From the NCBI RefSeq assembly GCF_006345805.1, contig NW_021833065.1, positions 558,001 to 622,000 on the forward strand: a stretch of DNA of 64,000 nucleotides. The letters run 5' to 3'. Below are positions 3,727-49,418 of the stretch, piece by piece; positions within the stretch are counted from its first letter, which is position 1, and each line of letters begins with the position of its first letter. The translations under genes were made by a program, and so were the position numbers. The stretch comes from Octopus sinensis. Taxonomy: Eukaryota. The notes under the pieces are model-generated. The model did not search any database. It saw only the letters and a list, made by a program, of their open reading frames with translations, and had not been told where the DNA came from.

Positions 3727-3789
<63 letters not shown>

Positions 3790-3840
3790 GGTATGTATAT
3801 ATATATTATATATATACATACCTATATACATATAGAGAGG

Positions 3841-3895
<55 letters not shown>

Positions 3896-10195: not shown

Positions 10196-10300
<105 letters not shown>

Positions 10301-10442
10301 CAACAACAACATACTGTAACATCTCTTATCCTTCACTTGCCCTAGGACGCTGGGTGTGTCTTGGCGTGTGATTGTAACAAACATGCAGATTAAATAATAA
10401 TAATAGTAAATAATAATAATAAAATCATGCCACATATTGATA

Positions 10443-11281: not shown

Positions 11282-11370
<89 letters not shown>

Positions 11371-11372
11371 AA

Positions 11373-13184
11373 TATTAGGAAATAAATCCAAATTTACAGG
11401 GAAAAAATCAGATTTAGGATTAAATCCAATTTTATAGTAAAATATTATATAATATTAATTAGAGACAAAACCACTATTTTGCAAAACAAACAAGGAAAGA
11501 CTTAATCAATACATAAAATTTTAATAAAAAGTAAAAAAAACCGCCACTACAATTGTTTCATGTCTTGAACGACAATCTTCAGGTGGATTTCCGATCTAAA
11601 ATATCAATATTTTAAAATATAAGTATAAAAAATAATTTTAAAATAATTAAAGTATCAATGAAAAAATATAAATATATAATCTATATATAACCTATATATA
11701 ATCCATATATAATCAATATATAAACTAAAATAAACCTATCAACAATTAAATATAAAACAAAATAAAAATAAACTATATATACACACATATACATATAACT
11801 AAGTATATATAACCATATCTAAATACATACACTAACTCATACACCTATATATATATCCCTATACATACACATAAAAACGTCTAAGCAACGATAAATAAAT
11901 AAAATAGCCAAATACTTCAACACAATACTTATTCATACTCCCTCACACACACATACAACCCACATTCATAAACAATATACGTATACCCGCTCACACATAC
12001 ATATACAAACATACAGAACTCGATATATACACCAATATATTCACACCCACATCTATACAGATAAATAAATTACGCAAACAATCACACACACACACACACA
12101 TTCACACATGCATAAACACTCAAAAGAAAAATAAACAATTGTTTATGTATGTGTGAATGTGTGTGTGTGTGCGTATTTTAGTTGTGTAATTTATTTATCT
12201 GTATGAGTGTGGGTGTGAACATATTGTTGTATATATCGAGTTTAGTACGTATGTATATGTATATGTGAGGGGGTATACGTATATGTTGTGTGTGTGTGTT
12301 TTACGTATGTATATTTGTGTGTGAATGTATATATGGAGATTGCTATATAGGTATAATTGCGTATGGTAAAGGGAGTTTTATCATTATATGTATATGGGTT
12401 TCTTTTATCATGATGGTTTATTAATGATTTGTAGTAAATTCTGTATATTTAAGTTGATTATATATTATTCCATTCATAATTAAAAAAAAAAACGTTCGAT
12501 CACCACGTGCAAAGAATTGTTTATTTTTCTTTTGAGTGTTTATGTATGTGTGAATGTGTGTGTGTGTGTGTGTGATTGTTTGCGTAATTTATTTATCTGT
12601 ATAGATGTGGGTGTGAATATATTGGTGTATATATCGAGTTCTGTATGTTTGTATATGTATGTATGAGCGGGTATACGTATATTGTTTATGAATGTGGGTT
12701 GTATGTGTGTGTGAGGGAGTATGAATAAGTATTGTGTTGAAGTATTTGGCTATTTTATTTATTTATCGTTGCCTAGACGTTTTTATGTGTATGTATAGGG
12801 ATATATATATAGGTGTGTGAGTTAGTGTATGTATTTAGATATGGTTATATATACTTAGTTATATGTGTATGTGTGTATATATAGTTTATTTTTATTTTGT
12901 TTTATATTTAATTGTTGATAGGTTTATTTTAGTTTATATATTGATTATATATGGATTATATATAGGTTATATATAGATTATATATTTATATTTTTTCATT
13001 GGTACTTTAATTATTTTAAAATTATTTTTTATACTTATATTTTAAAATATTGATATTTTAGATCGGAAATCCACCTGAAGACATGAAACAATTGTAGTGG
13101 CGGTTTTTTTACTTTTTATTAAAATTTTATGTATTGATTAAGTCTTTCCTTGTTTGTTTTGCAAAATAGTGGTTTTGTCTCTAA

Positions 13185-13195
<11 letters not shown>
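11373..13195. mobile_element. PLE-type fold-back element with ~690-bp inverted arms in (TA)n
   Basis: Left arm ~11447-12140 is the near-exact reverse complement of ~12515-13195. The spacer holds a diverged partial repeat of the right arm. (TA)n on both sides. Confidence 0.85.
11544..11586 (-). ncRNA. Intact minimal type-I hammerhead ribozyme motif
   Basis: Reverse complement: CCAC CTGAAGA T TGTC gttcaa GACA T GAAAC aatt GTA^ GTGG. All core nucleotides present, 4-bp stem I, palindromic stem III (ACAATTGT). Confidence 0.85.
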
Positions 13196-13231
<36 letters not shown>

Positions 13232-13472: not shown

Positions 13473-13545
<73 letters not shown>

Positions 13546-13822
13546 CAACAATTGAGGGTAAAATTAATTAATCAATTTCACCAAGTATTCAGTATGTAAA
13601 AGGACCATTTAAGGCGAATTCAAAATATTACATTATATAATTAGGGCTTAGTAAAATAAATTACTTTGCCACATACTGGACTTAGTAGAAATAGCAGCCA
13701 AAACAAATTTCTTTAGCCATTTCTACTACTTAAAGAAAAATTTCTCTCAGATAATGTTTACTCCAGACAGCTCACGAAGGTTTGGAGGTAAATACAGAAA
13801 AATATCACAAGTACATAGATCG

Positions 13823-13885
13823 TTTGAGTACGTCAACGTTTCAAGATTAGCCAAATAAAATCAGCATTTCTTTCGTCAGCTCAAA
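13823..13885 (-). ncRNA. Minimal hammerhead ribozyme motif (562-bp family)
   Basis: Reverse complement: TTTGAG CTGACGA aaga aat gctga ttttat ttggc taa tctt GAAAC gttgac GTA^ CTCAAA. Confidence 0.85.
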
Positions 13886-14464
13886 ATTTCTTAATTTGGA
13901 TTTGGAAACACTAAAAAGAAGGAACTTTACCTCTTGGCGAACTTATCGCTTCAAATGAACCAGCTCCAACTGCCAGTGCCAACAAATTCAAAATGCGCAG
14001 GCGTAAATCTCTGCAAACCTTTTCCACCCACGTGGTCTATCTAGCAAACATTATATTTTAACCGCGAGAACCAAGGCAGTATGACAGAGAGAAATGAATT
14101 ATAATATCAACAATTGAGGGTAAAATTAATTAATCAATTTCACCAAGTGTTCAGTATGTAAAAGGACCATTTAAGGCGAATTCAAAATATTACATTATAT
14201 AATTAGGGCTTAGTAAAATAAATTACTTTGCCACATACTGGACTTAGTAGAAATAGCAGCCAAAACAAATTTTTTTAGCCATTTCTACTACTTAAAGAAA
14301 AATTTCTCTCAGATAATCTTTACTCCAGACAGCTCACGAAGGTTTGGAGGTAAATACAGAAAAATATCACAAGTACATAGATCGTTTGAGTACGTCAACG
14401 TTTCAAGATTAGCCAAATAAAATCAGCATTTCTTTTTAGTGTTTCCAAATCCAAATTAAGAAAT

Positions 14465-14527
14465 TTTGAGCTGACGAAAGAAATGCTGATTTTATTTGGC
14501 TAATCTTGAAACGTTGACGTACTCAAA
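14465..14527 (+). ncRNA. Minimal hammerhead ribozyme motif in the inverted arm (562-bp family)
   Basis: Same motif read directly on the plus strand. 6-bp stem I (tttgag/ctcaaa). Confidence 0.85.
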
Positions 14528-14824
14528 CGATCTATGTACTTGTGATATTTTTCTGTATTTACCTCCAAACCTTCGTGAGCTGTCTGGAGTAAAGATTATC
14601 TGAGAGAAATGTTTCTTTAAGTAGTAGAAATGGCTAAAAAAATTTGTTTTGGCTGCTATTTCTACTAAGTCCAGTATGTGGCAAAGTAATTTATTTTACT
14701 AAGCCCTAATTATATAATATATATATATATATATTTTAATATGTATGTATAGGGGAAAAGTAAAAAAGAAGCAAAGAAAATACACATTAGGTATAAAAGT
14801 AATGGTTTTGACGAAACCCTTTGT

Positions 14825-18579: not shown

Positions 18580-19182
18580 CTTCATTTTCTAAGCCCAGAA
18601 TGGGAGGGAAGGATAGAGAGGAAGTGAGAGAGACAGAGGGAGGTAGAGAGGAAGACAGAAAGAGAGTGTGAGAAGGAAAAAGAGAGGAAGATATGCAGGA
18701 AAGAGAGAGGGTGATATGAAGAAAGAGAAAGGGTGTGTGGAGCGATAGCGAGACGGAGGGAGGCAGAGAAGGGGAAGGGAAAGAAAAACAGAGTGAGGGA
18801 GAGAGAGAATGAAGGATGTGAGAGAAAGGGAGAGACGGTGTGAGAAGAGGAGTGAAAAGGAGAAGTATATGAGAGAGAGGGGAGACGTAGATCTAGAGAG
18901 AGATAAAAGAAGGAAGAGAGAATTGGGAAAAGGAAGAAGATCCGAAAGGGAGGAAGAGACAGAATGAGGGAGAGAGGTGAGAAAAAGAGAAAGATATGGA
19001 AAAGAGAGGGAGAGAGGTAGGTGTAAAGAGACAGAAAGGAGGGGAGGGAGAGAGAAGTGGGAAAAGGAGGAAGTTATGAAAGAGAGAGAGGAGGAGCAGG
19101 TAACGAAGATATGAAGGAAAGAGAAAAACGAAAGGTATATATATATATATATACAAATATATACATATATATATATACACAC

Positions 19183-19213
<31 letters not shown>

Positions 19214-19297
19214 CATTATATATACACATATATATACATATACATATATACATATATATATATATTCATAAATATATATATACAGATATATACATAT

Positions 19298-19363
<66 letters not shown>

Positions 19364-19416
19364 GTATGTATATATGTATGTATGTATGTATGTATATATC
19401 TGTGTATATATATTTA

Positions 19417-19459
<43 letters not shown>

Positions 19460-19559
19460 TATATATATGTATGTATGTATTTCTTCTAATACACACATAT
19501 ATTTACATATAAATCTCTATATATATATACATCCTTACATATGCATCTATACATATACA

Positions 19560-19595
<36 letters not shown>
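18580..19595. repeat. GA-rich low-complexity tract and (TA)n/(CA)n microsatellites
   Basis: Directly visible. Confidence 0.9.
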
Positions 19596-19599
<4 letters not shown>

Positions 19600-20165
19600 C
19601 ACAGAACTTGAGGCGATCCAACGAAGCTACACGAAGAAGATAGCCTCTGTGCAGCATATAAGATACTGGGAAAGACTCAAGAGATTAAAACTCTGTTCCT
19701 TGGAGCGTAGGCGAGAAAGATATGCCATAATATACATCTGGAAGATCCTGGAAGGAATTGTCCCAAACTTTGGCATCGAGAGTTACACAAATGCCAGAAC
19801 TGGACGCCACTGCGTGGTGCCAAGGACTCCAAATTTGCCATCAAGATGTAGGACAAGATACTGTGATAGCCTGGGCTTCAGAGGCCCACAGCTCTTCAAT
19901 ATCCTCCCGAAGAACCTGAGGGACCTGCATGGGGTGGATGCGGATGTCTTTAAAGTAGGATTGGATCTCTTTCTGTCAGGTGTCCAGGATGAACCAACTT
20001 CACGGCAGGAGGTACAGATGAGGGCAGCTGCATCAAATTCTCTCATGCACCAAATGGCAGTTGCTAAGAAGCATTCGTGAGGTAAAATCATGTAGCAACA
20101 CCAAATGGCGGTGCCCCAGCATGGCCACAGCTCAAGAGCTGAAACTGGAAAACATAAACATAAAC
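19596..20165 (+). mobile_element. 5'-truncated 3' end of the same CR1-group LINE family
   Basis: ORF 19541-20080: LEAIQRSYT...ERRRERYAIIYIWKILEGIVPNFG...GFRGPQLFN. The 3' UTR ends in (AAACAT)n. Confidence 0.92.
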
Positions 20166-21076: not shown

Positions 21077-21329
21077 CTTCTTCTTCTTCTTCTTCTTCTT
21101 CTTCTTCTTCTTCTTCTCTTCTTCTTCTTCTTCTTCTTCTTCTTCTTCTTCTTCTTCCAAATCACAGTCTTCCTTCCCAAATACCTCGCTTGCATAGTTG
21201 CTCTTCTCGCCGCCGTTCTAGCCCCGCCACCACCAGTTTCTCGCTATGTTGGTACTACTCAAGGTTTATATAGAACGTACATCGGTGTGTTAAGTCCTGT
21301 TCATTTGGGGAGTCGGTAAACTGAGTTCG

Positions 21330-24220
21330 GAGAATCTAGTCACGTCAGATCTCTCCCATAACATCTCGCCTTATCATGCTTTTTTCATCAGGTATCTCGT
21401 CTCATACAAATCGTTCATGGTGGACACAGGATCGAGTTGTAATGTTTGGCTCTTAAGGTTCATCTCTACCAAACCGAATCCTTCCGGCATTTCTTTATAT
21501 GCAGTGAATCAGTCTCTCATCAAGCCCTATGGCCAGGTGTCCTTATCGTTGGACCTATACTTACGTAGAGACTTTGAATGGATTTTTACCATCGCCGACC
21601 TTCCTCATCCTATCCTCGGTGCAGATTTCCTACACCATGATTTACTTTTGATAGATGTCAGGTGCCAGAAACTTTTGGATAGTACCACATCTTTACCTAC
21701 CCTGCTTGCGAATCTACCGCCGCTCTTATCAGTCCGTCATTCTTCGTGGCTGCTGCATGAAACTAGTCTCACGCACTCCTCACTTCGTTTCCCGAGTTGA
21801 CGAACCTTTCCTTCAAGCCTAGCCAGGCAATCCACTCAATTCAACACTTCATCACAACGACCGGTTCATCCGTTTTCTCTCGACTACGACGGTTAGCTCC
21901 GGACAGACTCAAGATAGCTCGAGCCGAGTTCGAGCATATGCTCCAGCTCGGACTTATACGACCATCCACCAGCCCATAGGCATGTCCCATACATTTGGCA
22001 CGCAAAGGTGATACTGACTTTCGCCCAGTTGGAGACTACAAACGTCTCAACGCCGCCACCACCCCTGATAGATATCCACTACATTATTTTCAGGATTTCT
22101 CATCCGCTCTGAATAACTGCTAGGTGTTTTCCAAATTGGACCTGGTACGAGTGTACCATCAAATACCAATGAATCCGGAAGATGTACCCAAAACCGCGGT
22201 GACAACACTGTTTGGCTCATTTAAATTTCTATCTATGCCATTCGGACTGCGAAACGCCGCTAATACGTTCCAGCGCTTTATCGACGAAGTTACTCGTGGA
22301 CTTCCAGGTGTTTTTGCCTGCATCGACGACGTACACACTCATTGCCAGTTCTACTGTTGAATTACATCAGCAGCATCTTTCTCAGTTCTAGCGACTCTTA
22401 CAGTACAACGTCAACGTCAACCTGGCGAAATGTATTTTTGGCAAATCCTCATTGGAATTTTTAGGACACGTCGTTGATTGTGATGGCATTCGACCTGTGC
22501 CCGCTAAGATCCAAGCCATCCAGGATCTAGCTCATCCCACGTCGTTCCGGCAGCTCCGACACTTCCTCGATCTCATCAACTTTTATTGTCGTTTCCTACC
22601 TAATTGTGCTCGGAAATTATTACCTCTTTTAAAGAACAGAACGAAAAAAGACGCGGCTATTTCCCTTTCACCAGATGAATCGTTGGCATTCCAGACAGTC
22701 AAGTCAGACTTAGTTCAAGTTGTTACACTAGCCCATCCGATTCCTGGGGCACGTCTCGTACTTACCGTTGATGTTTCAAATTTCGCAGTTGGTGCGATAT
22801 TATAGCAAGATGTTAATCAACGCCTACAACTCTTGGCATTCTTTTCGCGTCGGCTCAGGGATTCCGGAAACGAGACACAGCACCAATGTGCGCGAGTTGC
22901 TAGCCATTTACTTAGCAGTCAAGCATTTTTGCCATTTTCTCGTTGGGCGTGATTTTGTGGCTTTCACAGATCACAAATATATTTCTTTACTACCCACAAG
23001 GGGCTAAACATAGAGGGGACAAACAAGGACAGACAAAGGGATTAAGTCGATTACATCGACCCCAGTGCGAAACTGGTACTTTATTTATCGACCCAGAAAG
23101 GATGAAAGACAAAGTCAACCTCGGCGGAATTCGAACTCAGAACGTAACGACAGACGAAATACCGCTAAGCATTTCGCCCTGCGCGCTAACGTTTCTGCCA
23201 GCTCGCCGCCTTCAGATCACAAATAGTTGACGTTCGCCTTCATTCAAAACCAGACAAATACTCGCCTCATGAGATCAGACACCTCGACTTTATCTCACAC
23301 TTCACACCACCTTTCTGGAGCGGACAACGTCCCTGCGGATGCACTGTCGAGACTTCCAGTTTGTTCTGTCTTCAGCTGCGATCGATCTTGTCACGCTTGC
23401 TACCGACCAGGCCCTTCTGTAATCAATCTACCATTCACTCAATGTCGTTTGGAGTACTTACCCTTGTCAACAACTGACGGAACTATCCTGTGTGACGTAT
23501 CGACAGGAGCACCTCGCCCTCTTGTTCCTGACAACCATCGCCGAAGCGTGTTCGATGCCTTGCACTCCTTATCTCATCCAGGTATTGCGGCATCGGTCGA
23601 AATCATTACGGCCAGTTTTTTTTGGCAGGACATCACCGCCGAGATATCACCGCTTGGTCTCGCTCCTGTCGTCAGTGTCAGCGTTCTAAGATCCATACAC
23701 ACATTCGTTCGCCACTCGGAAAATTTGACCAACCTGACAGTCGTTTTCGCCACATTCATATCGACCTCGTCGGTGCGTGTCCTGTTAGTAACGGGTACTC
23801 CTATATTCTTATCTGTGTCGACTGTTTCTCTCGATGGCCTGAAGCCATTCTCCTTGCCAACATCTCCACTGAATCAGTCGCTCGCGCCTTGATATCAGGC
23901 TGGATATCACTTTTCGACGTTCCCTCAAGGATCACCATCGATCGGTGGCGACAGTTTGAATCATAGCTCTTCCGAGAACTTTCTCGTCTCTTGGGAGTGC
24001 AGCATTTGCACACGACAAGCTACCACCCCGCTTCTAATGGGATGTTAGAGCGATTCCACGGTCAACTGAAGTCAGCTCTTCGTGCATCACTAGATCAACT
24101 AAGATGGACCGAGTACCTTCCCATCGTCCTTTTGCCTTGTCGGTCCTCCGTGAAAGCAGATCTGGGCTATTCTTCGGCCGAATTACTCTACGGTACACCA
24201 CTATCACAAATCATGGTACG
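21330..24220 (+). mobile_element. Decayed Gypsy/Ty3 LTR retrotransposon pol (protease-RT-RNaseH-integrase)
   Basis: VDTGS and ILGADFL (protease); [14 protein letters not shown]...[14 protein letters not shown]...CIDD (RT); DVSNFAVGAIL and RELLAIYLAVKHF...FTDHK (RNaseH); HIDLVG and YHPASNGMLERFH (integrase). Domain order is Gypsy. Confidence 0.95.
22980..23212 (-). mobile_element. tRNA-derived SINE inserted into the Gypsy RNaseH with a 13-bp TSD
   Basis: cagatcacaaata at 22967-22979 and 23213-23225. Confidence 0.93.
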
Positions 24221-35982: not shown

Positions 35983-36068
<86 letters not shown>

Positions 36069-36328
36069 TACACACACACACACACACATACATACACACA
36101 TACACACACACACACGCACACACACACACATTTGGAATGGTGGAGTGGTGGATCTTGAAGCACATTAAGCTAAAAATAATAACATGTAAATATTCATATA
36201 CACCTATATGAAAACCTCCATCGTTAAGAGTCGACCATATTCTGCGTCTGGGAAATGTCTCTTCGGGGCCCAGGTTTAGGAAAAATTTGTAGCAGTTATT
36301 CAGCATTTACCCGAATGTCGTGATTCGC

Positions 36329-37739: not shown

Positions 37740-37810
37740 CTTGGGGAAATTTCGAACCTGGATTTTCATTCCTAAGGTGTTTTTCGATGTTGTTGTTGTT
37801 GTTATTGTTG

Positions 37811-37904
<94 letters not shown>

Positions 37905-39590: not shown

Positions 39591-39686
<96 letters not shown>

Positions 39687-39879
39687 TACATTATATAAAA
39701 GGGCTTAGTAAAATAAATTACTTTGCCGCATACTGAACTCATTAGAAATAGCAGCTAAAAAACTTTTTTAAAACTATTTCTAATACTTAAAGAAAACCTC
39801 TCTCATATAGTGTTTGCTCAATTCAACTCACGCAAATATTGGGGGAGAGAGACATTAAAAAATCAAGTGCAAAGGTTAT

Positions 39880-39932
39880 TGAGAACGTACGTTTCAAGAT
39901 TAGTCAAAATCGACATTTCTATCATCAGCTCA
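39880..39932 (-). ncRNA. Minimal type-I hammerhead ribozyme, first of 16 tandem copies (last at 48223-48275)
   Basis: Reverse complement: TGAG CTGATGA t aga aat gtcg attt tgac taa tct t GAAAC gtac GTT^ CTCA. Predicted cut between 39884 and 39883. Confidence 0.85.
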
Positions 39933-42900
39933 GAACTCCCTGGTTTGGATATGAAAACACTGAAAGTGGGAGCATACCCTTTCGGCTTCCTATCGCTTCT
40001 GAAGATCTGCTCGTAACTAACAGTGCCAACAAACTCAAAAATGCAAGGGAAGAATTTCTGCTCTCCCCTTTCCACCAGCGTGGGTTAAAATCAGTAAACA
40101 CTATGCTTTTTTCGGTAAAATCCGCGGCATTATATAGAGAGAGATGAATTATAATTTCAACAATTGAGGGTAAAATTAATTAATTAATCAATTTCACCAA
40201 GTATTCAGTATGCAAAGGGACCATTTAAGGCGAATTCAAATTATTACATTATATAAAAAGGCTTAGTAAAATAAATTACTTTGCCGCATACTGAACTCAT
40301 TAGAAATAGCAGCTAAAAAATTTTTTAAAACTATTTCTAATACTTAAAGAAAACCTCTCTCATATAGTGTTTTCTCATTCAACTCACGCAAATATGGGGG
40401 TAGAGACATTAAAAAATCAGGTGCAAAGGTTATTTGAGAACGTACGTTTCAAGATTAGTCAAAATCGACATTTCTATCATCAGCTCAGAACTCCCTGGTT
40501 TGGATTTGAAAACACTGAAAGTGGGAGCATACCCTTTCGGCTTCCTATCGCTTCTGAAGATCTGCTCGTAACTAACAGTGCCAACAAACTCAAAAGCGCA
40601 AGCGAAGAATTTCTGCTCTCCCCTTTCCACCAGCGTGGGTTAAAATCAGTAAACACTATGCTTTTTTCGGTAAAATCCGCGGCATTATATAGAGAGAGAT
40701 GAATTATAATTTCAACAATTGAGGGTAAAATTAATAATTAATCAATTTCACCAAGTATTCAGTATGCAAGGGACCATTTAAGGCGAATTCAAATTATTAC
40801 ATTATATAAAAGGGCTTAGTAAAATAAATTACTTTGCCGCATACTGAACTCATTAGAAATAGCAGCTAAAAAAACTTTTTTAAAACTATTTCTAATACTT
40901 AAAGAAAAACCTCTTCATATAGTGTTTGCTCATTCAACTCACGCAAATATGGGGGTAGAGACATTAAAAAATCAGGTGCAAAGGTTATTTGAGAACGTAC
41001 GTTTCAAGATTAGTCAAAATCGACATTTCTATCATCAGCTCAGAACTCCCTGGTTTGGATTTGAAAACACTGAAAGTGGGAGCATACCCTTTCGGCTTCC
41101 TATCGCTTCTGAAGATCTGCTCGTAACTAACAGTGCCAACAAACTCAAAAATGCAAGCGAAGAGATTTTCTGCTCTCCCCTTTCCACCAGCGTGGGTTAA
41201 AATCAGTAAACACTATGCTTTTTTCGGTAAAATCCGCGGCATTATATAGAGAGATATGAATTATAATTTCAACAATTGAGGGTAAATTATTAATTAATCA
41301 ATTTCACCAAGTATTCAGTATGCAAAGGGACCATTTAAGGCGAATTCAAATTATTACATTATATAAAAGGGCTTAGTAAAATAAATTACTTTGCCGCATA
41401 CTGAACTCATTAGAAATAGCAGCTAAAAAAACTTTTTTAAAACTATTTCTAATACTTAAAGAAAACCTCTCTCATAGAGTGTTTGCTCAATTCAACTCAC
41501 GCAAATATGGGGGTAGAGACATTAAAAAATCAAGTGCAAAGGTTATTTGAGAACGTACGTTTCAAGATTAGTCAAAATCGACATTTCTATCAACAGCTCA
41601 GAACTCCCTGGTTTGGATTTGAAAACACTGAAAGTGGGAGCATACCCTTTCGGCTTCCTATCGCTTCTGAAGATCTGCTCGTAACTAACAGTGCCAACAA
41701 ACTCAAAAATGCAAGCGAAGAATTTCTGCTCTCCCCTTTCCACCAGCGTGGGTTAAAATCAGTAAACACTATGCTTTTTTCGGTAAAATCCGCGGCATTA
41801 TATAGAGAGAGATGAATATAATTTCAACAATTGAGGGTAAAATTAATTAATTAATCAATTTCACCAAGTATTCAGTATACAAAGGGACCATTTAAGGCGA
41901 ATTCAAATTATTACATTATATAAAAGGGCTTAGTAAAATAAATTACTTTGCCGCATACTGAACTCATTAGAAATAGCAGCTAAAAAAACTTTTTTAAAAC
42001 TATTTCTAATACTTAAAGAAAACCTCTCTCATATAGTGTTTGCTCAATTCAACTCACGCAAATATGGGGGTAGAGACATTAAAAAATCAAGTGCAAAGGT
42101 TATTTGAGAACGTACGTTTCAAGATTAGTCAAAATCGACATTTCTATCATCAGCTCAGAACTCCCTGGTTTGGATTTGAAAACACTGAAAGTGGGAGCAT
42201 ACCCTTTCGGCTTCCTATCGCTTCTGAAGATCTGCTCGTAACTAACAGTGCCAAAAACTCAAAAATGCAAGCGAAAATTTCTGCTCTCCCCTTTCCACCA
42301 GCGTGGGTTAAAATCAGTAAACACTATGCTTTTTTCGGTAAAATCCGCGCATTATATAGAGAGAGATGAATTATAATTTCAACAATTGAGGGTAAAATTA
42401 ATTAATTAATCAATTTCACCAAGTATTCAGTATGCAAAGGGACCATTTAAGGCGAATTCAAATTATTACATTATATAAAAAGGCTTAGTAAAATAAATTA
42501 CTTTGCCGCATACTGAACTCATTAGAAATAGCAGCTAAAAAAACTTTTTTAAAACTATTTCTAATACTTAAAGAAAACCTCTCTCATATAGTGTTTGCTC
42601 AATTCAACTCACGCAAATATGGGGGTAGAGACATTAAAAAATCAAGTGCAAAGGTTATTTGAGAACGTACGTTTCAAGATTAGTCAAAATCGACATTTCT
42701 ATCATCAGCTCAGAACTCCCTGGTTTGGATTTGAAAACACTGAAAGTGGGAGCATACCCTTTCGGCTTCCTATCGCTTCTGAAGATCTGCTCGTAACTAA
42801 CAGTGCCAACAAACTCAAAAATGCAAGCGAAGAATTTCTGCTCTCCCCTTTCCACCAGCGTGGGTTAAAATCAGTAAACACTATGCTTTTTTCGGTAAAA

Positions 42901-45900
42901 TCCGCGGCATTTAATAGAGAGATATGAATTATAATTTCAACAATTGAGGGTAAAATTAATTAATTAATCAATTTCACCAAGTATTCAGTATGCAAAGGGA
43001 CCATTTAAGGCGAATTCAAATTATTACATTATATAAAAGGGCTTAGTAAAATAAATTACTTTGCCGCATACTGAACTCATTAGAAATAGCAGCTAAAAAA
43101 ACTTTTTTAAAACTATTTCTAATACTTAAATAAAACCTCTCTCATATAGTGTTTGCTCAATTCAACTCACGCAAATATGGGGGTAGAGACATTAAAAAAT
43201 CAAGTGCAAAGGTTATTTGAGAACGTACGTTTCAAGATTGTCAAATCGACATTTCTATCATCAGCTCAGAACTCCCTGGTTTGGATTTGAAAACACTGAA
43301 AGTGGGAGCATACCCTTTCGGCTTCCTATCGCTTCTGAAGATCTGCTCGTAACTAACAGTGCCAACAAACTAAAAATGCAAGCGAAGAATTTCTGCTCTC
43401 CCCTTTCCACCAGCGTGGGTTAAAATCAGTAAACACTATGCTTTTTTCGGTAAAATCCGCGGCATTATATAGAGAGAGATGAATTATAATTTCAACAATT
43501 GAGGGTAAAATTAATTAATTAATCAATTTCACCAAGTATTCAGTATACAAAGGGACCATTTAAGGCGAATTCAAATTATTACATTATATAAAAGGGCTTA
43601 GTAAAATAAATTACTTTGCCGCATACTGAACTCATTAGAAATAGCAGCTAAAAAAACTTTTTTAAAACTATTTCTAATACTTAAAGAAAACCTCTCTCGT
43701 ATAGTGTTTGCTCAATTCAACTCACGCAAATATGGGGGTAGAGACATTAAAAAATCAAGTGCAAAGGTTATTTGAGAACGTACGTTTCAAGATTAGTCAA
43801 AATCGACATTTCTATCATCAGCTCAGAACTCCCTGGTTTGGATTTGAAAACACTGAAAGTGGGAGCATACCCTTTCGGCTTCCTATCGCTTCTGAAGATC
43901 TGCTCGTAACTAACAGTGCCAACAAACTCAAAAATGCAAGCGAAGAATTTCTGCTCTCCCCTTTCCACCAGCGTGGGTTAAAATCAGTAAACACTATGCT
44001 TTTTTCGGTAAAATCCGCGGCATTATATAGAGAGAGATGAATTATAATTTCAACAATTGAGGGTAAAATTAATTAATTAATCAATTTCACCAAGTATTCA
44101 GTATGCAAAGGGACCATTTAAGGCGAATTCAAATTATTACATTATATAAAAGGGCTTAGTAAAATAAATTACTTTGCCGCTACTGAAATCATTAGAAATA
44201 GCAGCTAAAAAAACTTTTTTAAGACTATTTCTAATACTTAAAGAAAAACTCCTCTCTTATAGTGTTTGCTCAATTCAACTCACGCAAATATGGGGGTAGA
44301 GACATTAAAAAATCAGGTGCAAAGGTTATTTGAGAACGTACGTTTCAGAGAGTCAAAATCGACATTTCTATCATCAGCTCAGAACTCCCTGGTTTGGATT
44401 TGAAAACACTGAAAGTGGGAGCATACCCTTTCGGCTTCCTATCGCTTCTGAAGATCTGCTCGTAACTAACAGTGCCAACAAACTCAAAAATGCAAGCGAA
44501 GAATTTCTGCTCTCCCCTTTCCACCAGCGTGGGTTAAAATCAGTAAACACTATGCTTTTTTCGGTAAAATCCGCGGCATTATATAGAGAGATATGAATTA
44601 TAATTTCAACAATTGAGGGTAAAATTAATTAATTAATCAATTTCACCAAGTATTCAGTATGCAAAGGGACCATTTAAGGCGAATTCAAATTATTACATTA
44701 TATAAAAGGGCTTAGTAAAATAAATTACTTTGCCGCATACTGAACTCATTAGAAATAGCAGCTAAAAAAACTTTTCTAAAACTATTTCTAATACTTAAGA
44801 AAACCTCTCTCATATAGTGTTTGCTCAATTCAACTCACGCAAATATGGGGGTAGAGACATTAAAAAATCAAGTGCAAAGGTTATTTGAGAACGTACGTTT
44901 CAAGATTAGTCAAAATCGACATTTCTATCATCAGCTCAGAACTCCCTGGTTTGGATTTGAAAACACTGAAAGTGGGAGCATACCCTTTCGGCTTCCTATC
45001 GCTTCTGAAGATCTGCTCGTAACTAACAGTGCCAACAAACTCAAAAATGCAAGCGAAGAATTTCTGCTCTCCCCTCTCCACCAGCGTGGGTTAAAATCAG
45101 TAAACACTATGCTTTTTTCGGTAAAATCCGTGGCATTATATAGAGAGAGATGAATTATAATTTCAACAATTGAGGGTAAAATTAATTAATTAATCAATTT
45201 CACCAGTTCAGTATGCAAAGGACCATTTAGGCGAATTCAAATTATTACATTATATAAAAGGGCTTAGTAAAATAAATTACTTTGCCGCATACTGAACTCA
45301 TTAGAAATAGCAGCTAAAAAAACTTTTTTAAAACTATTCTAATACTTAAAGAAAACCTCTCTCATATAGTGTTTTCTCAATTCAACTCACGCAAATATGG
45401 GGGTAGAGACATTAAAAAATCAAGTGCAAAGGTTATTGAGAACGTACGTTTCAAGATTAGTCAAAATCGACATTTCTATCATCAGCTCAGAACTCCCTGG
45501 TTTGGATTTGAAAACACTGAAAGTGGGAGCATACCCTTTCGGCTTCCTATCGCTTCTGAAGATCTGCTCGTAACTAACAGTGCCAACAAACTCAAAAATG
45601 CAAGCGAAGAATTTCTGCTCTCCCCTTTCCACCAGCGTGGGTTAAAATCAGTAAACACTATGCTTTTTTCGGTAAAATCCGCGGCATTATATAGAGAGAG
45701 ATGAATTATAATTTCAACAATTGAGGGTAAAATTAATTAATTAATCAATTTCACCAAGTATTCAGTATGCAAGGGACCATTTAAGGCGAATTCAAATTAT
45801 TACATTATATAAAAGGGCTTAGTAAAATAAATTACTTTGCCGCATACTGAACTCATTAGAAATAGCAGCTAAAAAAACTTTTTTAAAACTATTTCTAATA

Positions 45901-48900
45901 CTTAAAGAAAACCTCTCTCGTATAGTGTTTTCTCAATTCAACTCACGCAAATATGGGGGTAGAGACATTAAAAAATCAAGTGCAAAGGTTATTTGAGAAC
46001 GTACGTTTCAAGATTAGTCAAAATCGACATTTCTATCATCAGCTCAGAACTCCCTGGTTTGGATTTGAAAACACTGAAAGTGGGAGCATACCCTTTCGGC
46101 TTCCTATCGCTTCTGAAGATCTGCTCGTAACTAACAGTGCCAACAAACTCAAAAATGCAAGCGAAGAATTTCTGCTCTCCCCTTTCCACCAGCGTGGGTT
46201 AAAATCAGTAAACACTATGCTTTTTTCGGTAAAATCCGCGGCATTATATAGAGAGAGATGAATTATAATTTCAACAATTGAGGGTAAAATTAATTAATTA
46301 ATCAATTTCACCAAGTATTCAGTATGCAAAGGGACCATTTAAGCGAATTCAATTATTACATTATATAAAAGGGCTTAGTAAAATAAATTACTTTGCCGCA
46401 TACTGAACTCATTAGAAATAGCAGCTAAAAAAACTTTTTTAAAACTATTTCTAATACTTAAAGAAAACCTCTCTCATATAGTGTTTGCTCAATTCAACTC
46501 ACGCAAATATGGGGGTAGAGACATTAAAAAATCAAGTGCAAAGGTTATTTGAGAACGTACGTTTCAAGATTAGTCAAAATCGACATTTCTATCAACAGCT
46601 CAGAACTCCCTGGTTTGGATTTGAAAACACTGAAAGTGGGAGCATACCCTTTCGGCTTCCTATCGCTTCTGAAGATCTGCTCGTAACTAACAGTGCCAAC
46701 AAACTCAAAAATGCAAGCGAAGAATTCTGCTCTCCCCTTTCCACCAGCGTGGGTTAAAATCAGTAAACACTATGCTTTTTTCGGTAAAATCCGCGGCATT
46801 ATATAGAGAGAGATGAATTATAATTTCAACAATTGAGGGTAAAATTAATTAATTAATCAATTTCACCAAGTATTCAGTATGCAAAGGGACCATTTAAGGC
46901 GAATTCAAATTATTACATTATATAAAAGGGCTTAGTAAAATAAATTACTTTGCCGCATACTGAACTCATTAGAAATAGCAGCTAAAAAAACTTTTTTAAA
47001 ACTATTTCTAATACTTAAAGAAAACCTCTCTCATATAGTGTTTGCTCAATTCAACTCACGCAAATATGGGGGTAGAGACATTAAAAAATCAAGTGCAAAG
47101 GTTATTTGAGAACGTACGTTTCAAGATTAGTCAAAATCGACATTTCTATCATCAGCTCAGAACTCCCTGGTTTGGATTTGAAAACACTGAAAGTGGGAGC
47201 ATACCCTTTCGGCTTCCTATCGCTTCTGAAGATCTGCTCGTAACTAACAGTGCCAACAAACTCAAAAATGCAAGCGAAGAATTTCTGCTCTCCCCTTTCC
47301 ACCAGCGTGGGTTAAAATCAGTAAACACTATGCTTTTTTCGGTAAAATCCGCGGCATTATATAGAGAGAGATGAATTATAATTTCAACAATTGAGGGTAA
47401 AATTAATTAATTAATCAATTTCACCAAGTATTCAGTATGCAAAGGGACCATTTAAGGCGAATTCAAATTATTACATTATATAAAAGGGCTTAGTAAAATA
47501 AATTACTTTGCCGCATACTGAACTCATTAGAAATAGCAGCTAAAAAAACTTTTTTAAAACTATTTCTAATACTTAAAGAAAACCTCTCTCATATAGTGTT
47601 TGCTCAATTCAACTCACGCAAATATGGGGGTAGAGACATTAAAAAATCAAGTGCAAAGGTTATTTGAGAACGTACGTTTCAAGATTAGTCAAAATCGACA
47701 TTTCTATCATCAGCTCAGAACTCCCTGGTTTGGATTTGAAAACACTGAAAGTGGGAGCATACCCTTTCGGCTTCCTATCGCTTCTGAAGATCTGCTCGTA
47801 ACTAACAGTGCCAACAAACTCAAAAATGCAAGCGAAGAATTTCTGCTCTCCCCTTTCCACCAGCGTGGGTTAAAATCAGTAAACACTATGCTTTTTTCGG
47901 TAAAATCCGCGGCATTATATAGAGAGAGATGAATTATAATTTCAACAATTGAGGGTAAAATTAATTAATTAATCAATTTCACCAAGTATTCAGTATGCAA
48001 AGGGACCATTTAAGGCGAATTCAAATTATTACATTATATAAAAGGGCTTAGTAAAATAAATTACTTTGCCGCATACTGAACTCATTAGAAATAGCAGCTA
48101 AAAAAACTTTTTTAAAACTATTTCTAATACTTAAAGAAAACCTCTCTCATATAGTGTTTTCTCAATTCAACTCACGCAAATATGGGGGTAGAGACATTAA
48201 AAAATCAAGTGCAAAGGTTATTTGAGAACGTACGTTTCAAGATTAGTCAAAATCGACATTTCTATCATCAGCTCAGAACTCCCTGGTTTGGATTTGAAAA
48301 CACTGAAAGTGGGAGCATACCCTTTCGGCTTCCTATCGCTTCTGAAGATCTGCTCGTAACTAACAGTGCCAACAAACTCAAAAATGCAAGCGAAGAATTT
48401 CTGCTCTCCCCTTTCCACCAGCGTGGGTTAAAATCAGTAAACACTATGCTTTTTTCGGTAAAATCCGCGGCATATATAGAGAGAGATGAATTATAATTTC
48501 AACAATTGAGGGTAAAATTAATTAATTAATCAATTTCACCAAGTATTCAGTATGCAAAGGGACCATTTAAGGCGAATTCAAATTATTACATTATATAAAA
48601 GGGCTTAGTAAAAAAAAAAGTTTTTTAAAAAAGTTTTTTTAGCTGCTATTTCTAATGAGTTCAGTATGCGCCAAAGTAATTTATTTTACTAAGCCCTTTT
48701 ATATAATGTAATAATTTGAATTCGCCTTAAATGGTCCCTTTGCATACTGAATACTTGGTGAAATTGATTAATTAATTAATTTTACCCTCAATTGTTGAAA
48801 TTATAATTCATCTCTCTCTATATAATGCCGCGGTATTTCCCGAAAAAAGCATAGTGTTTACTGATTTTAACCCACGCTGGTGGAAAGGGGAGAGCAGAAA

Positions 48901-49022
48901 TTCTTCGCTTGCATTTTTGAGTTTGTTGGCACTGTTAGTTACGAGCAGATCTTCAGAAGCGATAGGAAGCCGAAAGGGTATGCTCCCACTTTCAGTGTTT
49001 TCAAATCCAAACCAGGGAGTTC

Positions 49023-49075
49023 TGAGCTGATGATAGAAATGTCGATTTTGACTAATCTTGAAACGTACGTTCTCA
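49023..49075 (+). ncRNA. Hammerhead ribozyme copy in the inverted arm
   Basis: tgag ctgatga ... gaaac gtac gtt ctca read directly on plus. Predicted cut after 49071. Confidence 0.85.
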
Positions 49076-49355
49076 AATAACCTTTGCACTTGATTTTTTA
49101 ATGTCTCTACCCCCATATTTGCGTGAGTTGAATTGAGCAAACACTATATGAGAGAGGTTTTCTTTAAGTATTAGAAATAGTTTAAAAAAAGTTTTTTTAG
49201 CTGCTATTTCTAATGAGTTCAGTATGCGGCAAAGTAATTTATTTTACTAAGCCCTTTTATATAATGTAATAATTTGAATTCGCCTTAAATGGTCCCTTTG
49301 CATACTGAATACTTGGTGAAATTGATTAATTAATTAATTTTACCCTCAATTGTGG

Positions 49356-49418
<63 letters not shown>

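What the first reader, a model, noticed from the sequence alone, without database searches (positions are those of the whole stretch)
39679..49362. Sixteen-unit, 557-bp tandem array in which every unit carries a hammerhead ribozyme: a retrozyme-like element with an unusually long monomer
Seen: 16 near-identical head-to-tail units, each containing on the minus strand UGAG-CUGAUGA-[stem II]-GAAAC-GUAC-GUU^-CUCA (a complete type-I HHR core with a 4-bp stem I). There is no credible coding capacity, there is a terminal inversion, and both flanks are (TA)n. Established: Penelope-like elements carry minimal HHRs in their pseudo-LTRs. Metazoan retrozymes are non-coding tandem HHR repeats, generally with monomers of a few hundred nt, that yield circular RNAs. 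Inference: a minus-strand transcript would be cut into ~557-nt monomers that could circularise. Rolling-circle reverse transcription by a Penelope RT could then deposit such a long homogeneous array in one event. A satellite annotator would miss this. I am not aware of such a family described in cephalopods but cannot search.
Basis: partly seen in the sequence, partly recalled or inferred. Interest (0 to 1): 0.93.

Follow-up and report, generated by a model that had tools for sequence, protein, structure and literature searches.

The report
Hammerhead-ribozyme retrozyme array in a cephalopod
This 9.7-kb block is a non-coding mobile element of the known "retrozyme" kind: a 558-bp unit carrying a self-cutting hammerhead RNA motif, copied about 17 times. 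Its ends, and two smaller relatives nearby, bear the insertion marks of Penelope-like retrotransposons, so it is a new example of a known class.

Summary
From 39680 to 49359 there are 15 full and 2 partial 551-558-bp units in minus orientation, then 1.3 units inverted, with (TA)n on both sides. Of the 16 minus-strand hammerheads, 12 are consensus, 2 have stem II indels and 2 carry a core-killing A6>U change.

The motif is not chance: 0 descriptor hits in 300 shuffles of the window and 8 in 20,000 shuffled monomers. A 74%-identical sister family (B, 13545-14721) keeps every invariant core base and differs only at the free positions N7 and H17. It also has a compensatory change in stem II and a palindromic stem III loop. 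A third, unrelated element (C, 11368-13202) carries the same minimal hammerhead design.

All three elements are non-coding, built as head-to-head inverted arms, and all six ends abut (TA)n. None of the six ends lies at the cleavage site.

The best reading is a metazoan non-LTR retrozyme with a dimer-type hammerhead, mobilised by Penelope-like target-primed reverse transcription on circular or multimeric RNA.

"Unusually long monomer" is not supported, because published retrozymes span 51-972 bp. "One event" is doubtful. Cleavage, circular RNA and genome-wide spread could not be tested. This is a new member of a known kind, of moderate interest.

The parts
39594..39679 (.). (AT)n microsatellite, left flank of array A (presumed target)
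   Evidence: TRF. Sequence.
39680..48617 (-). Array A, long arm. It holds unit positions 167-558, then 15 full 551-558-nt units, then positions 1-204 (about 16.06 units). Its 3' end at unit position ~204 (UUAUAUAAUGUAAUAAUUU) abuts the (AT)n tract.
47665..47717 (-). Reference hammerhead of array A: UGAG / CUGAUGA / stem II (U.U base, AGA-UCU, internal loop, GUC-GAC) / GAAA / AC-GUAC-GU / U17. The cut falls between 47669 and 47668. U17 of the other minus-strand copies: 39884, 40439, 40994, 41552 (dead core), 42109, 42664, 43222 (stem II indel), 43777, 44335 (stem II indel), 44890, 45441, 45998, 46554 (dead core), 47111, 48227.
48614..48639 (.). Central head-to-head junction of array A. It carries a 13-nt AAAAAAGTTTTTT duplication and joins unit position ~167 of one arm to position ~110 of the other. 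The join is asymmetric, so it is not a simple fold-back.
48623..49359 (+). Array A, short inverted arm. It holds unit positions 110-558 and 1-~283 (1.32 units), with one consensus hammerhead at 49027-49071. Its 3' end at unit position ~283 (GAAAUUA) abuts the (TA)n tract.
   Evidence: (I1-I3).
49360..49412 (.). (TA)n microsatellite, right flank of array A
13476..13544 (.). (TA)n microsatellite, left flank of element B
13545..14433 (-). Element B (sister family, 74% identical to A), minus arm. It starts inside a hammerhead just after CUGACGA, runs through one full unit, then unit positions 1-~280. The intact hammerhead lies at 13886->13823: UUUUGAG / CUGACGA / stem II / GAAA / AC-GUUGAC-GU / A17, with the cut between 13829 and 13828.
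14434..14721 (+). Element B, inverted plus arm. It holds unit positions ~477-558 and 1-~193, with an intact hammerhead at 14464-14527. Its 3' end abuts (TA)n at 14717-14734.
   Evidence: I2, I3.
11368..12144 (-). Element C (unrelated in sequence), left arm. A minimal hammerhead lies at 11586->11544: CCAC / CUGAAGA / U.U + UGUC-GACA / GAAA / AC-AAUU-GU / A17. Its 3' end abuts (TA)n at 11309-11367.
12511..13202 (+). Element C, right inverted arm, 96.6% identical to the left arm. Its hammerhead copy has lost 13 nt (stem II). Its 3' end abuts (TA)n at 13192-13229, about 85 nt short of the other arm's end.
   Evidence: (I1, I5).

Best explanation
Array A is a non-autonomous retroelement of the animal (non-LTR) retrozyme kind.

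**Shown from sequence**
- A 558-bp non-coding, AT-rich unit is repeated head to tail.
- Each unit encodes on the minus strand a type I hammerhead with a short helix I, a long interrupted helix II and a 2-bp helix III.
- Helix III is capped by a palindromic loop; ACGUACGU is self-complementary.
- A diverged sister family (B) and an unrelated element (C) lie in the same window. They share the ribozyme design, the head-to-head inverted arms and the (TA)n flanks.

**Inferred mechanism**
1. A minus-strand multimeric transcript pairs neighbouring or trans hammerheads through the palindrome into the double-hammerhead form.
2. It cuts after GUU, releasing 558-nt monomers with 5'-OH and 2',3'-cyclic phosphate ends.
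3. A host RtcB-type tRNA ligase circularises them into a highly self-paired RNA.
4. A Penelope-like RT/GIY-YIG enzyme supplied in trans nicks a (TA)n microsatellite.
5. The TA-repeat DNA 3' end anneals to one of two preferred UAUA-rich sites inside the unit (about positions 193-204 and 278-283).
6. The RT runs round the circle or along a multimer and lays down tandem copies.
7. Priming from the second strand gives the inverted, 5'-truncated arm, and the two cDNAs are joined in the middle.
8. Later gene conversion or unequal exchange and point decay shaped the present array. The decay includes two dead cores.
For: **Hammerhead is real**
- The descriptor gave 0/300 hits in window shuffles and 8/20,000 in monomer shuffles. 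The real window holds three distinct motif types.
- A and B are 74% identical overall. All 13 invariant core positions are identical, and the only core differences are at N7 (U/C) and H17 (U/A), which are free positions.
- Distal stem II changes from U-A to C-G (compensatory) and from C-G to U.G.
- Loop 3 changes from GUAC to GUUGAC and stays self-complementary.
- Helix I is 4 bp in A and 6 bp in B.
- Element C has entirely different helix I and II sequences with the same architecture and an ACAAUUGU palindrome.

**Dimer mode**
- Cofolding two copies of B yields the double hammerhead with a 10-bp helix III, at -34.2 kcal/mol against 2 x -11.6 kcal/mol.
- These traits match published PLE-type and amphibian hammerheads (PMC4209133). 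They include the U.U at the base of helix II in axolotl HHR_Amex2, which cleaves 22% as a monomer and efficiently as a dimer (PMC7229834).

**Monomer RNA**
- The MFE is -151.9 kcal/mol, z = -4.9 against shuffles. The complement is weaker, at -129 kcal/mol and z = -4.0.
- With a structure predicted from one family alone, the other family's substitutions give 10-13 compensatory pairs against about 4.3 expected (P <= 0.01). Broken pairs are also fewer than expected.
- RNAalifold recovers hammerhead helices I and II without being told of them.

**Retroelement signature**
- All six ends of A, B and C abut (TA)n, which covers 1.66% of the window.
- The outer flanks of A and B are not homologous, so these are independent insertions.
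- The four outward 3' ends of A and B fall at the same two unit sites, within about 5-11 nt of each other.
- None of the six ends of A, B and C is at the cleavage site. This argues for a circular or uncleaved multimeric template.
- Inverted 5'-truncated copies and microsatellite bias are published Penelope-like element (PLE) hallmarks (PMC8557442).

**Other retrozyme features**
- Non-coding.
- GC content of 34-35%.

**Host and partner elements**
- The host is probably a cephalopod. The best named hit of a neighbouring LINE fragment is from Argonauta hians.
- Octopus genomes carry recently active Penelope families (PMC13282606).
Against: - No Rfam hammerhead model matches A, B or C, even at E <= 10 on 91-106-nt stretches.
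- The usually conserved G10.1-C11.1 pair is replaced by U.U in A and C and by A-U in B.
- Helix I of A is only 4 bp.
- As a lone monomer, the hammerhead fold of A is worth only -2.4 kcal/mol against an MFE of -10.9 kcal/mol for the same stretch. Published PLE-type minimal hammerheads cleave poorly in vitro (PMC4209133).
- The hammerhead is not the best-conserved part of the unit. A central domain (alignment columns 91-300) is 80-97% identical between A and B, while the hammerhead region is 73-77%.
- No Penelope-like RT or GIY-YIG ORF is present in the window.
- No relatives were retrievable from any accessible collection. Genome-wide copy number, transcription, cleavage and circularity are therefore untested.
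- The published (TA)n bias is for Naiad PLEs, which lack canonical hammerheads and are only remnants in cephalopods (PMC8557442). The partner element is therefore uncertain.
Confidence: 0.8

Rival explanations
1. The locus began as a retrozyme insertion of a few units. Most of its present 16-17 units then arose at the DNA level, by unequal crossing-over, replication slippage and gene conversion. Under this reading the length did not come from one long rolling-circle reverse transcription. This rivals only the "one event" part of the interpretation.
For: - Variants shared by non-adjacent units fail the four-gamete test. The incompatible column pairs are 19 vs 71, 19 vs 188, 236 vs 527 and 71 vs 82.
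- One variant recurs every third unit, in A3, A6 and A9.
- Units A12-A15 next to the junction are nearly identical (99.6-100%), while A1-A3 are at 98.6%.
- Most published retrozyme families reach at most 7 units (bioRxiv 10.64898/2026.07.22.740005).
Against: - The same pattern could come from RT template switching among a heterogeneous pool of circular RNAs, or from assembly errors in homopolymer runs.
- Arrays of up to 62, 180 and 300 units are reported for retrozymes (PMC7229834; bioRxiv 10.64898/2026.07.22.740005).
- The array has clean retro-type ends.
Confidence: 0.3
2. The arrays are tandem, truncated pseudo-LTR or 3'-end fragments of an autonomous Penelope-like element. They are not a dedicated non-autonomous retrozyme family.
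For: - The hammerhead design is closer to the PLE minimal type than to the canonical loop-loop type of most retrozymes (PMC4209133).
- Insertions of 5'-truncated PLEs with an inverted partner are common, and dual hammerheads 100-700 bp apart on opposite strands are described for them (PMC4209133, PMC8557442).
- Element C, with single arms of about 700-780 nt and one hammerhead each, fits this reading best.
Against: - Array A is 15 exact unit-length repeats with no RT or endonuclease remnant. A PLE tandem would have a period of 3-4 kb.
- Family B keeps the same unit of about 560 nt despite 26% divergence. The unit as a whole has therefore propagated as such.
Confidence: 0.1
3. The array is an ordinary satellite DNA whose unit contains a hammerhead-like string by chance. 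It has no ribozyme function and no retrotransposition.
For: - Rfam covariance models do not recognise the motif.
- Helices I and II are weak.
- No expression data are available.
Against: - The chance rate is about 4e-4 per monomer, and 0 hits were seen in 300 window shuffles.
- The core is conserved, with changes only at free positions, in a 74%-identical family.
- Compensatory changes are present.
- A third unrelated element has the same design.
- There are three independent (TA)n-flanked inverted-arm insertions.
Confidence: 0.03
4. The terminal inversion, the array length, or both are assembly artefacts, for example a fold-back chimeric long read.
For: - Many unit differences are 1-nt homopolymer indels typical of long-read error.
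- PLE-type structures are known to trouble assemblies (PMC8557442).
Against: - The junction is asymmetric, joining unit position ~167 to position ~110, so it is not a mirror fold-back.
- The inverted arm ends at a different unit position from the long arm. It runs into its own (TA)n tract and then unique flank.
- Elements B and C show the same architecture with different junctions.
Confidence: 0.05

Closest known systems
Metazoan non-LTR retrozymes (Cervera & de la Pena 2020, PMC7229834), such as those of Mytilus galloprovincialis, Acropora millepora and the axolotl
   Same: - Head-to-tail non-coding repeats, each with one type I hammerhead in a single polarity.
- Low GC content.
- A highly self-paired monomer RNA.
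- Arrays ranging from dimers to tens of units.
- A proposed cycle of self-cleavage, RtcB ligation, circular RNA, and target-primed tandem cDNA.
   Different: - The monomer is 558 nt, against 170-400 nt in that paper. It is still inside the 51-972 bp range of the 2026 vertebrate survey.
- The hammerhead lacks a recognisable loop 1/loop 2 design and the G10.1-C11.1 pair, and has a 26-30-nt interrupted helix II.
- The host lineage (cephalopod) was not found in the searched literature.
- The inverted 5'-truncated arm and (TA)n flanks are explicit here.
Minimal, dimer-acting hammerheads in the pseudo-LTRs of Penelope-like elements (Cervera & de la Pena 2014, PMC4209133)
   Same: - Helix I of 4-6 bp with poorly defined loop 1.
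- A longer-than-usual helix II.
- A tiny helix III with palindromic 15.2-16.2 and loop 3.
- Predicted to act as dimers.
- Pairs of motifs a few hundred bp apart on opposite strands.
   Different: - There is no RT/GIY-YIG ORF between or near the motifs.
- The period is 558 bp rather than about 3 kb.
- A and C have a symmetric U.U at the base of helix II, rather than a single bulged nucleotide next to a G-C pair.
Axolotl HHR_Amex2 / Rtz_353 retrozyme (PMC7229834)
   Same: - A 2-bp helix III capped by a tetraloop.
- A U.U mismatch at the base of helix II.
- Weak activity as a monomer and efficient activity as a dimer.
   Different: - There is no sequence relationship.
- The axolotl unit is 350 bp.
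- Helix II is much shorter.
Non-autonomous PLE derivatives that form multicopy head-to-tail insertions (for example Chlamys-related MRC1 in Chlamydomonas; PMC8557442)
   Same: - Non-coding and PLE-dependent.
- Head-to-tail multicopy insertions.
- Microsatellite target bias.
- Inverted or tandem complex ends.
   Different: - Those elements lack canonical hammerheads.
- They share 3' ends with a known autonomous partner. No partner could be identified here.
Hammerhead-bearing satellites: newt satellite 2, Schistosoma Sm-alpha and the ~500-bp pDo500 of cave crickets (from my own knowledge, not re-read here)
   Same: - Tandem repeats transcribed and self-cleaved to unit length.
- pDo500 shows that a unit of about 500 bp is not unusual.
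   Different: - They are described as satellites, without insertion-site anatomy.
- The sequences are unrelated.
Plant LTR retrozymes (PMC4918200)
   Same: - Non-autonomous hammerhead-bearing retroelements.
- They propagate through circular RNAs of 600-1000 nt.
   Different: - They have type III hammerheads inside true LTRs, plus a PBS, a PPT and 4-bp TSDs.
- They are GC-rich.
- They are mobilised by Gypsy elements.

Membership tests
Hammerhead ribozyme, type I | Invariant core: C3-U4-G5-A6-N7-G8-A9, G12-A13-A14, the A15.1-U16.1 pair, and a cleavage triplet N-U-H | tested here: met
   - A: CUGAUGA...GAAA...GUU^.
- B: CUGACGA...GAAA...GUA^.
- C: CUGAAGA...GAAA...GUA^.
- Two of the 16 minus-strand A copies read CUGUUGA, which kills the core.
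Hammerhead ribozyme, type I | Three helices around the core, with helix I open-ended | tested here: met
   - Helix I is 4 bp in A and C and 6 bp in B.
- Helix II is 3+3 bp in A, 4+3 bp in B and 4 bp in C.
- Helix III is 2 bp in all three.
- RNAalifold recovers helices I and II unprompted.
Hammerhead ribozyme, type I | Covariation that maintains the helices | tested here: met
   - A vs B: distal stem II changes U-A to C-G and C-G to U.G, and helix I changes C.A to U-A.
- C has wholly different helices I and II in the same architecture.
- This rests on only three independent sequences.
Hammerhead ribozyme, type I | G10.1-C11.1 pair at the base of helix II (highly conserved but not universal) | tested here: not met
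   A and C have U.U and B has A-U. There is a precedent in axolotl HHR_Amex2, which is active (PMC7229834).
Hammerhead ribozyme, type I | Recognised by the Rfam hammerhead covariance models | tested here: not met
   No hammerhead model was listed at the gathering score, nor at E <= 10 on short stretches. The published PLE-type variants were found with RNAmotif structure descriptors (PMC4209133).
Hammerhead ribozyme, type I | Site-specific self-cleavage | not testable with these tools
   This needs in vitro transcription of monomer and dimer constructs.
PLE-type minimal / dimeric hammerhead | Short helix I, long helix II, and a small helix III with palindromic 15.2-16.2 and loop 3, giving an extended helix III in a dimer | tested here: met
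   - ACGUACGU (A), ACGUUGACGU (B) and ACAAUUGU (C) are self-complementary.
- Cofolding of B gives the double hammerhead, at -34.2 kcal/mol against 2 x -11.6 kcal/mol.
- The criteria come from PMC4209133.
PLE-type minimal / dimeric hammerhead | Located in the pseudo-LTR of an element that encodes RT and a GIY-YIG endonuclease | tested here: not met
   The Pfam scans of selected window ORFs found no RT or GIY-YIG domain. Matches were zf-RVT (LINE), RT_RNaseH_2, rve and Integrase_H2C2.
Metazoan non-LTR retrozyme | Head-to-tail repeats of a few hundred bp, each with one type I hammerhead, all in one polarity | tested here: met
   No ribozyme was found on the opposite polarity of the unit.
Metazoan non-LTR retrozyme | No coding capacity | tested here: met
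   The longest ORF is 110 aa with a TTG start. It has no homologue and no such product is on record.
Metazoan non-LTR retrozyme | Low GC content (<45-50%) | tested here: met
   GC is 0.34-0.35 across 40-48 kb.
Metazoan non-LTR retrozyme | Highly self-paired monomer RNA | tested here: met
   - z = -4.9, with 0 of 100 shuffles folding as well.
- Compensatory changes between A and B exceed the null expectation.
Metazoan non-LTR retrozyme | Several dispersed loci with variable unit number | tested here: inconclusive
   Two loci of related families lie 25 kb apart in the window (17.4 and about 2.1 units) with non-homologous flanks. The genome-wide count is not obtainable, because no animal genome collection is searchable here.
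Metazoan non-LTR retrozyme | Transcribed and accumulating as unit-length circular RNA | not testable with these tools
   This needs RNA-seq, northern blots, RNase R treatment or divergent-primer RT-PCR.
Penelope-like-element insertion architecture | An adjacent inverted 5'-truncated copy, giving complex tandem/inverted structures | tested here: met
   A, B and C all consist of two head-to-head arms with asymmetric inner breakpoints. The criterion comes from PMC8557442.
Penelope-like-element insertion architecture | Insertion bias for microsatellites | tested here: met
   Six of six ends abut (TA)n tracts, which cover 1.66% of the window.
Penelope-like-element insertion architecture | A 30-40-bp tail extension at one end | tested here: inconclusive
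   Only a 13-nt duplication was seen, at the inner junction of A. The (TA)n flanks hide any tail or target-site duplication.

The most novel reading that the evidence does not exclude
These three loci may preserve the so far undocumented integration signature of animal retrozymes.
- cDNA synthesis would be primed from both strands of a nicked (TA)n microsatellite.
- Priming would occur at two preferred internal UAUA-rich sites of a circular or multimeric RNA, never at the ribozyme-cut end.
- This would give head-to-head arms like those of Penelope-like elements.
- The 200-nt central domain is the best-conserved part of the unit, better conserved than the ribozyme, and it contains both priming sites. 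It would then be the module recognised by the reverse transcriptase.

If this generalises across the genome, it would be direct structural evidence that retrozymes are copied from circles by PLE machinery. It would also define a cephalopod retrozyme family whose hammerhead is intermediate between the canonical and PLE-minimal types.
Probability: 0.35. Interest if true: 0.6.

Novelty: new member of a known kind. Interest (0 to 1): 0.45.

Why it matters
Retrozymes are the main known natural route by which ribozymes make circular RNAs in animals. How they integrate, and which enzyme copies them, is still argued from co-occurrence and phylogeny.

This window offers three things:
- A clean example in a lineage (cephalopods) for which I found no published report.
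- A pair of diverged families that allow a covariation test of both the ribozyme and the whole RNA.
- Insertion-site anatomy that ties tandem hammerhead repeats to Penelope-type target-primed reverse transcription on templates without a free ribozyme-cut 3' end. That anatomy comprises (TA)n on all six ends, inverted 5'-truncated arms and recurrent end positions.

A satellite annotator, or Rfam, would miss all of this. The class itself is well established, including in molluscs, so a specialist would find it useful rather than surprising.

Tried and rejected

- TRF could not see the array, because its longest period is 500.
- Rfam gave no hammerhead hit at the gathering score on the whole window. 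It gave none at E <= 10 on the array, nor on short stretches around the A, B and C motifs. The low-scoring snoRNA and miRNA matches are low-complexity or C/D-box-like noise.

**Searches for relatives, all empty**
- Protein search with the 110-aa antisense pseudo-ORF found no hits.
- Exact-product look-ups of two window ORFs found nothing on record.
- Two metagenome pattern scans found nothing.
- Two viral pattern scans gave 0 hits and 3 hits. The one locus checked (L001) has no CUGANGA upstream, and the three are taken as chance.
- A 21-kb Argonauta hians locus around a LINE homologue has no descriptor hit and no meaningful similarity to A, B or C.

**Penelope-like ORF in the window**
- Pfam on the longest ORFs and on the most protein-like stop-free segments found no PLE domain.

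**Ideas rejected**
- LINE-tail (SINE-like) dependence on the neighbouring LINE is rejected. The monomer has no similarity to anything else in the window.
- A fold-back artefact is rejected, because the junctions are asymmetric.
- A viroid-like or deltavirus-like replicon is rejected. The ribozyme is in one polarity only and the element sits in genomic tandem DNA.

**Control set aside**
- The alifold-based pair count is biased, because the structure was derived from both sequences. It was replaced by the single-sequence-structure test.

Full report
**1. Observation**

The tandem array is real.
- The repeat finder reports 16 in-register copies spaced 551-558 bp apart between ~39.66 and 48.75 kb. 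It also reports a 741-nt segment (48623-49363) that is 99% complementary to the units.
- TRF did not report the array, but its longest period is 500. It did find the flanking (AT)n at 39594-39679 and (TA)n at 49360-49412.

I defined the monomer from cleavage site to cleavage site on the minus strand (47668->47111, 558 nt). BLAST against the window then gives the exact anatomy:
- A minus-oriented arm runs 48617->39680. It holds unit positions 167-558, 15 full units, then positions 1-204.
- A plus-oriented arm runs 48623-49359. It holds positions 110-558, then 1-~283.

The 15 full units are 95.3-99.8% identical pairwise, mean 98.0%. Many differences are single-base indels in homopolymer runs.

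One correction is needed. Of the 16 minus-strand copies:
- 12 are consensus.
- 2 have stem II indels.
- 2 read CUGUUGA, which changes the essential A6.

One more consensus copy lies on the plus strand in the inverted arm.

**2. Is the hammerhead more than chance?**

Rfam does not recognise it, neither at gathering scores nor at E <= 10 on the array or on ~100-nt stretches. I therefore wrote a descriptor in the style used by the field:
- CUGANGA.
- Helix II of at least 3 bp, allowing one mismatch at its base.
- GAAA.
- A15.1-U16.1 plus at least one more pair.
- H17.
- Helix I of at least 4 bp.

In the real window the descriptor hits the array copies and three further sites: 13879 (-), 14471 (+) and 11582 (-). 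It hit nothing in 300 dinucleotide-preserving shuffles of the 55-kb de-duplicated window. It hit only 8 of 20,000 shuffled monomers.

**3. A sister family and a third element in the same window**

Element B.
- The sites at 13.8-14.5 kb belong to a second array, B (13545-14721). It is 74% identical to A over the whole unit.
- All invariant core bases are identical between A and B. The only core differences are at N7 (U/C) and H17 (U/A), the two positions known to be free.
- Distal stem II shows one compensatory change (U-A to C-G) and one conservative change (C-G to U.G).
- Helix I is 6 bp in B and 4 bp in A.
- The base of helix II is A-U in B and U.U in A.
- Loop 3 changes from GUAC to GUUGAC, so ACGUACGU and ACGUUGACGU are both self-complementary.

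Element C.
- The site at 11.5 kb belongs to an unrelated element, C (11368-13202). It consists of two 96.6%-identical inverted arms.
- Its hammerhead (CCAC/CUGAAGA/U.U+UGUC-GACA/GAAA/AC-AAUU-GU/A^GUGG) has entirely different helices but the same design, with the palindrome ACAAUUGU.
- The copy in the other arm has lost 13 nt, which removes stem II.

Comparison with published hammerheads.
- These features match the published description of PLE-type and amphibian hammerheads: a short helix I, a long helix II, a tiny palindromic helix III, action as dimers, and pairs of motifs a few hundred bp apart on opposite strands (PMC4209133).
- They also match axolotl HHR_Amex2, which has a 2-bp helix III, a tetraloop and a U.U at the base of helix II. 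It cleaves weakly as a monomer and efficiently as a dimer (PMC7229834).

Folding.
- Cofolding two copies of B reproduces the double hammerhead with a 10-bp helix III, at -34.2 kcal/mol against 2 x -11.6 kcal/mol.
- A also forms the extended helix III.
- The monomeric hammerhead fold alone is weak, at -2.4 kcal/mol for A and -5.1 kcal/mol for B.

**4. The rest of the unit**

- The monomer RNA folds far better than shuffles: -151.9 kcal/mol, z = -4.9 on the hammerhead strand, and -129 kcal/mol, z = -4.0 on the complement.
- RNAalifold on A plus B recovers hammerhead helices I and II unprompted and proposes 127 pairs, 13 of them compensatory.
- That structure was derived from both sequences, so the control is biased. 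I therefore predicted a structure from one family only and asked what the other family's substitutions do to it.
- The result was 10-13 compensatory pairs against about 4.3 expected when the substitutions are re-dealt (P <= 0.01). Broken pairs numbered 33-38 against 45-50 expected.
- The hammerhead strand has more pairs, lower energy and more G.U-mediated conservative changes than the complement. This points to the hammerhead-polarity RNA as the selected molecule.
- The best-conserved part of the unit is not the ribozyme (73-77% identity). It is a central domain, alignment columns 91-300, at 80-97%.
- No ORF exceeds 110 aa, and that ORF has no relative among 5.8 billion proteins.
- GC content is 34-35%.

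**5. Insertion anatomy**

- A, B and C are each bracketed on both sides by (TA)n. (TA)n tracts cover only 1.66% of the window, in 27 tracts.
- The unique flanks of A and B are not homologous, so these are independent insertions.
- Each element is a head-to-head pair of arms whose 3' ends face outward into the (TA)n. Their 5'-truncated ends meet at an asymmetric junction: in A, unit position ~167 joins ~110; in B, a point inside the hammerhead joins position ~477. This also rules out a simple fold-back assembly artefact.
- In A and B the four outward ends fall at the same two TA-rich unit sites. These are ...UUAUAUAAUGUAAUAAUUU at positions ~193-204 and ...GUUGAAAUUA / GUUGAUAU at ~278-283.
- None of the six ends of A, B and C is at the ribozyme cleavage site.
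- Inverted 5'-truncated copies, complex tandem/inverted structures and microsatellite insertion bias are published hallmarks of Penelope-like elements (PMC8557442).
- I infer target-primed reverse transcription from both strands of a nicked (TA)n. The TA-repeat DNA end would anneal to internal UAUA-rich sites of a template that had no free ribozyme-cut 3' end, which means a circle or an uncleaved multimer.
- This is the model proposed for metazoan retrozymes (PMC7229834). It is also in line with the recent phylogenetic link between retrozymes and PLE pseudo-LTRs (bioRxiv 10.64898/2026.07.22.740005).

**6. Limits**

- There is no PLE ORF in the window. Pfam finds only a LINE zf-RVT and Gypsy-type RNase H and integrase remnants.
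- The best named relative of a LINE fragment next to B is from the octopod Argonauta hians, at 52% identity. This supports a cephalopod source.
- Octopus genomes have recently active Penelope families (PMC13282606). The published (TA)n bias, however, concerns Naiads, which lack canonical hammerheads and are relics in cephalopods. The partner element is therefore open.
- No relatives could be retrieved from any accessible collection.
- Copy number, transcription, cleavage and circularity remain untested.

**7. One event?**

- About ten variants are shared by non-adjacent units, and several pairs of them show all four combinations. The pairs are columns 19/71, 19/188, 236/527 and 71/82.
- One variant recurs in A3, A6 and A9.
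- A single copy-out from one homogeneous circle followed by independent decay would give mostly private variants.
- Later gene conversion or unequal exchange, or template switching among a heterogeneous RNA pool, is therefore needed. Assembly error may contribute.

**8. Comparison and verdict**

The element meets the sequence-level criteria of a metazoan non-LTR retrozyme. It carries a hammerhead intermediate between the canonical type and the PLE-minimal type.

Its 558-bp unit is not unusual:
- Published consensuses run from 51 to 972 bp.
- Arrays reach up to 300 units.
- The ~500-bp pDo500 satellite of cave crickets is a further precedent, cited from my own knowledge.

I found no report of hammerheads or retrozymes in cephalopods in the searchable library.

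The verdict is a new member of a known kind. The added value is the explicit insertion signature and the A/B pair for covariation. My confidence in the retrozyme reading is about 0.8. Interest is moderate.

Noticed in passing
window 13545-14721: Element B is a second, diverged (74% identity) family of the same retrozyme. It comprises about 1.6 minus-oriented units plus a 288-nt inverted arm, with (TA)n on both sides and two intact hammerheads on opposite strands about 590 bp apart.
   Followed up: yes
window 11368-13202: Element C is unrelated in sequence, AT-rich and non-coding. It has two 96.6%-identical inverted arms of about 700-780 nt around a ~366-nt centre, with (TA)n on both sides. One arm carries a minimal hammerhead. 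The other arm's copy has a 13-nt deletion that removes stem II. It may be a 5'-truncated Penelope-like element end or another retrozyme.
   Followed up: partly
units of arrays A and B, alignment columns 91-300 (for example window 47380-47575 on the minus strand): A central domain of about 200 nt is 80-97% identical between families A and B, while the rest of the unit is 53-77% identical. It contains a long hairpin with a compensatory change (UUAG/CUAA to GUAG/CUAC) and both recurrent 3'-end sites. It may be the RT-recognition or promoter module.
   Followed up: partly
window 41552-41596 and 46554-46598 (units A4 and A13); also A3/A6/A9 at alignment column 305: The same core-killing A6>U change occurs in two units nine units apart, and another variant recurs every third unit. 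The shared variants are mutually incompatible, which points to gene conversion, unequal exchange or heterogeneous templates.
   Followed up: partly
window 14702-15508 (-), 16490-17720 (-), 19490-20077 (+), 5197-5679 (-): These are LINE-type retrotransposon fragments.
- Two copies of the same RT C-terminal region lie in opposite orientation.
- One ORF looks endonuclease-like by eye only, with no Pfam match.
- 5197-5679 (-) carries a zf-RVT domain.
- The best named homologue is from Argonauta hians (52% identity), which suggests a cephalopod source.
   Followed up: partly
window 21294-23963 (+): A degenerate Ty3/Gypsy-type pol remnant is present, with RT_RNaseH_2, Integrase_H2C2 and rve domains spread over several frames.
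   Followed up: no
whole window, for example 3415-3919, 10169-10310, 10730-10850, 19136-19596, 36000-36130, 37802-37904: Microsatellite density is very high: 27 (TA)n tracts, long (AC)n and (TG)n runs, (TTA)34, and (TGA)n/(TAA)n. The abundant (TA)n may explain why three (TA)n-targeting elements lie within 40 kb.
   Followed up: no
window 48560-49363 with 46819-48117: The inverted arm is 99% complementary to neighbouring units over 741 nt. A read-through transcript would therefore form a long perfect hairpin, a possible source of small RNAs against the family.
   Followed up: no
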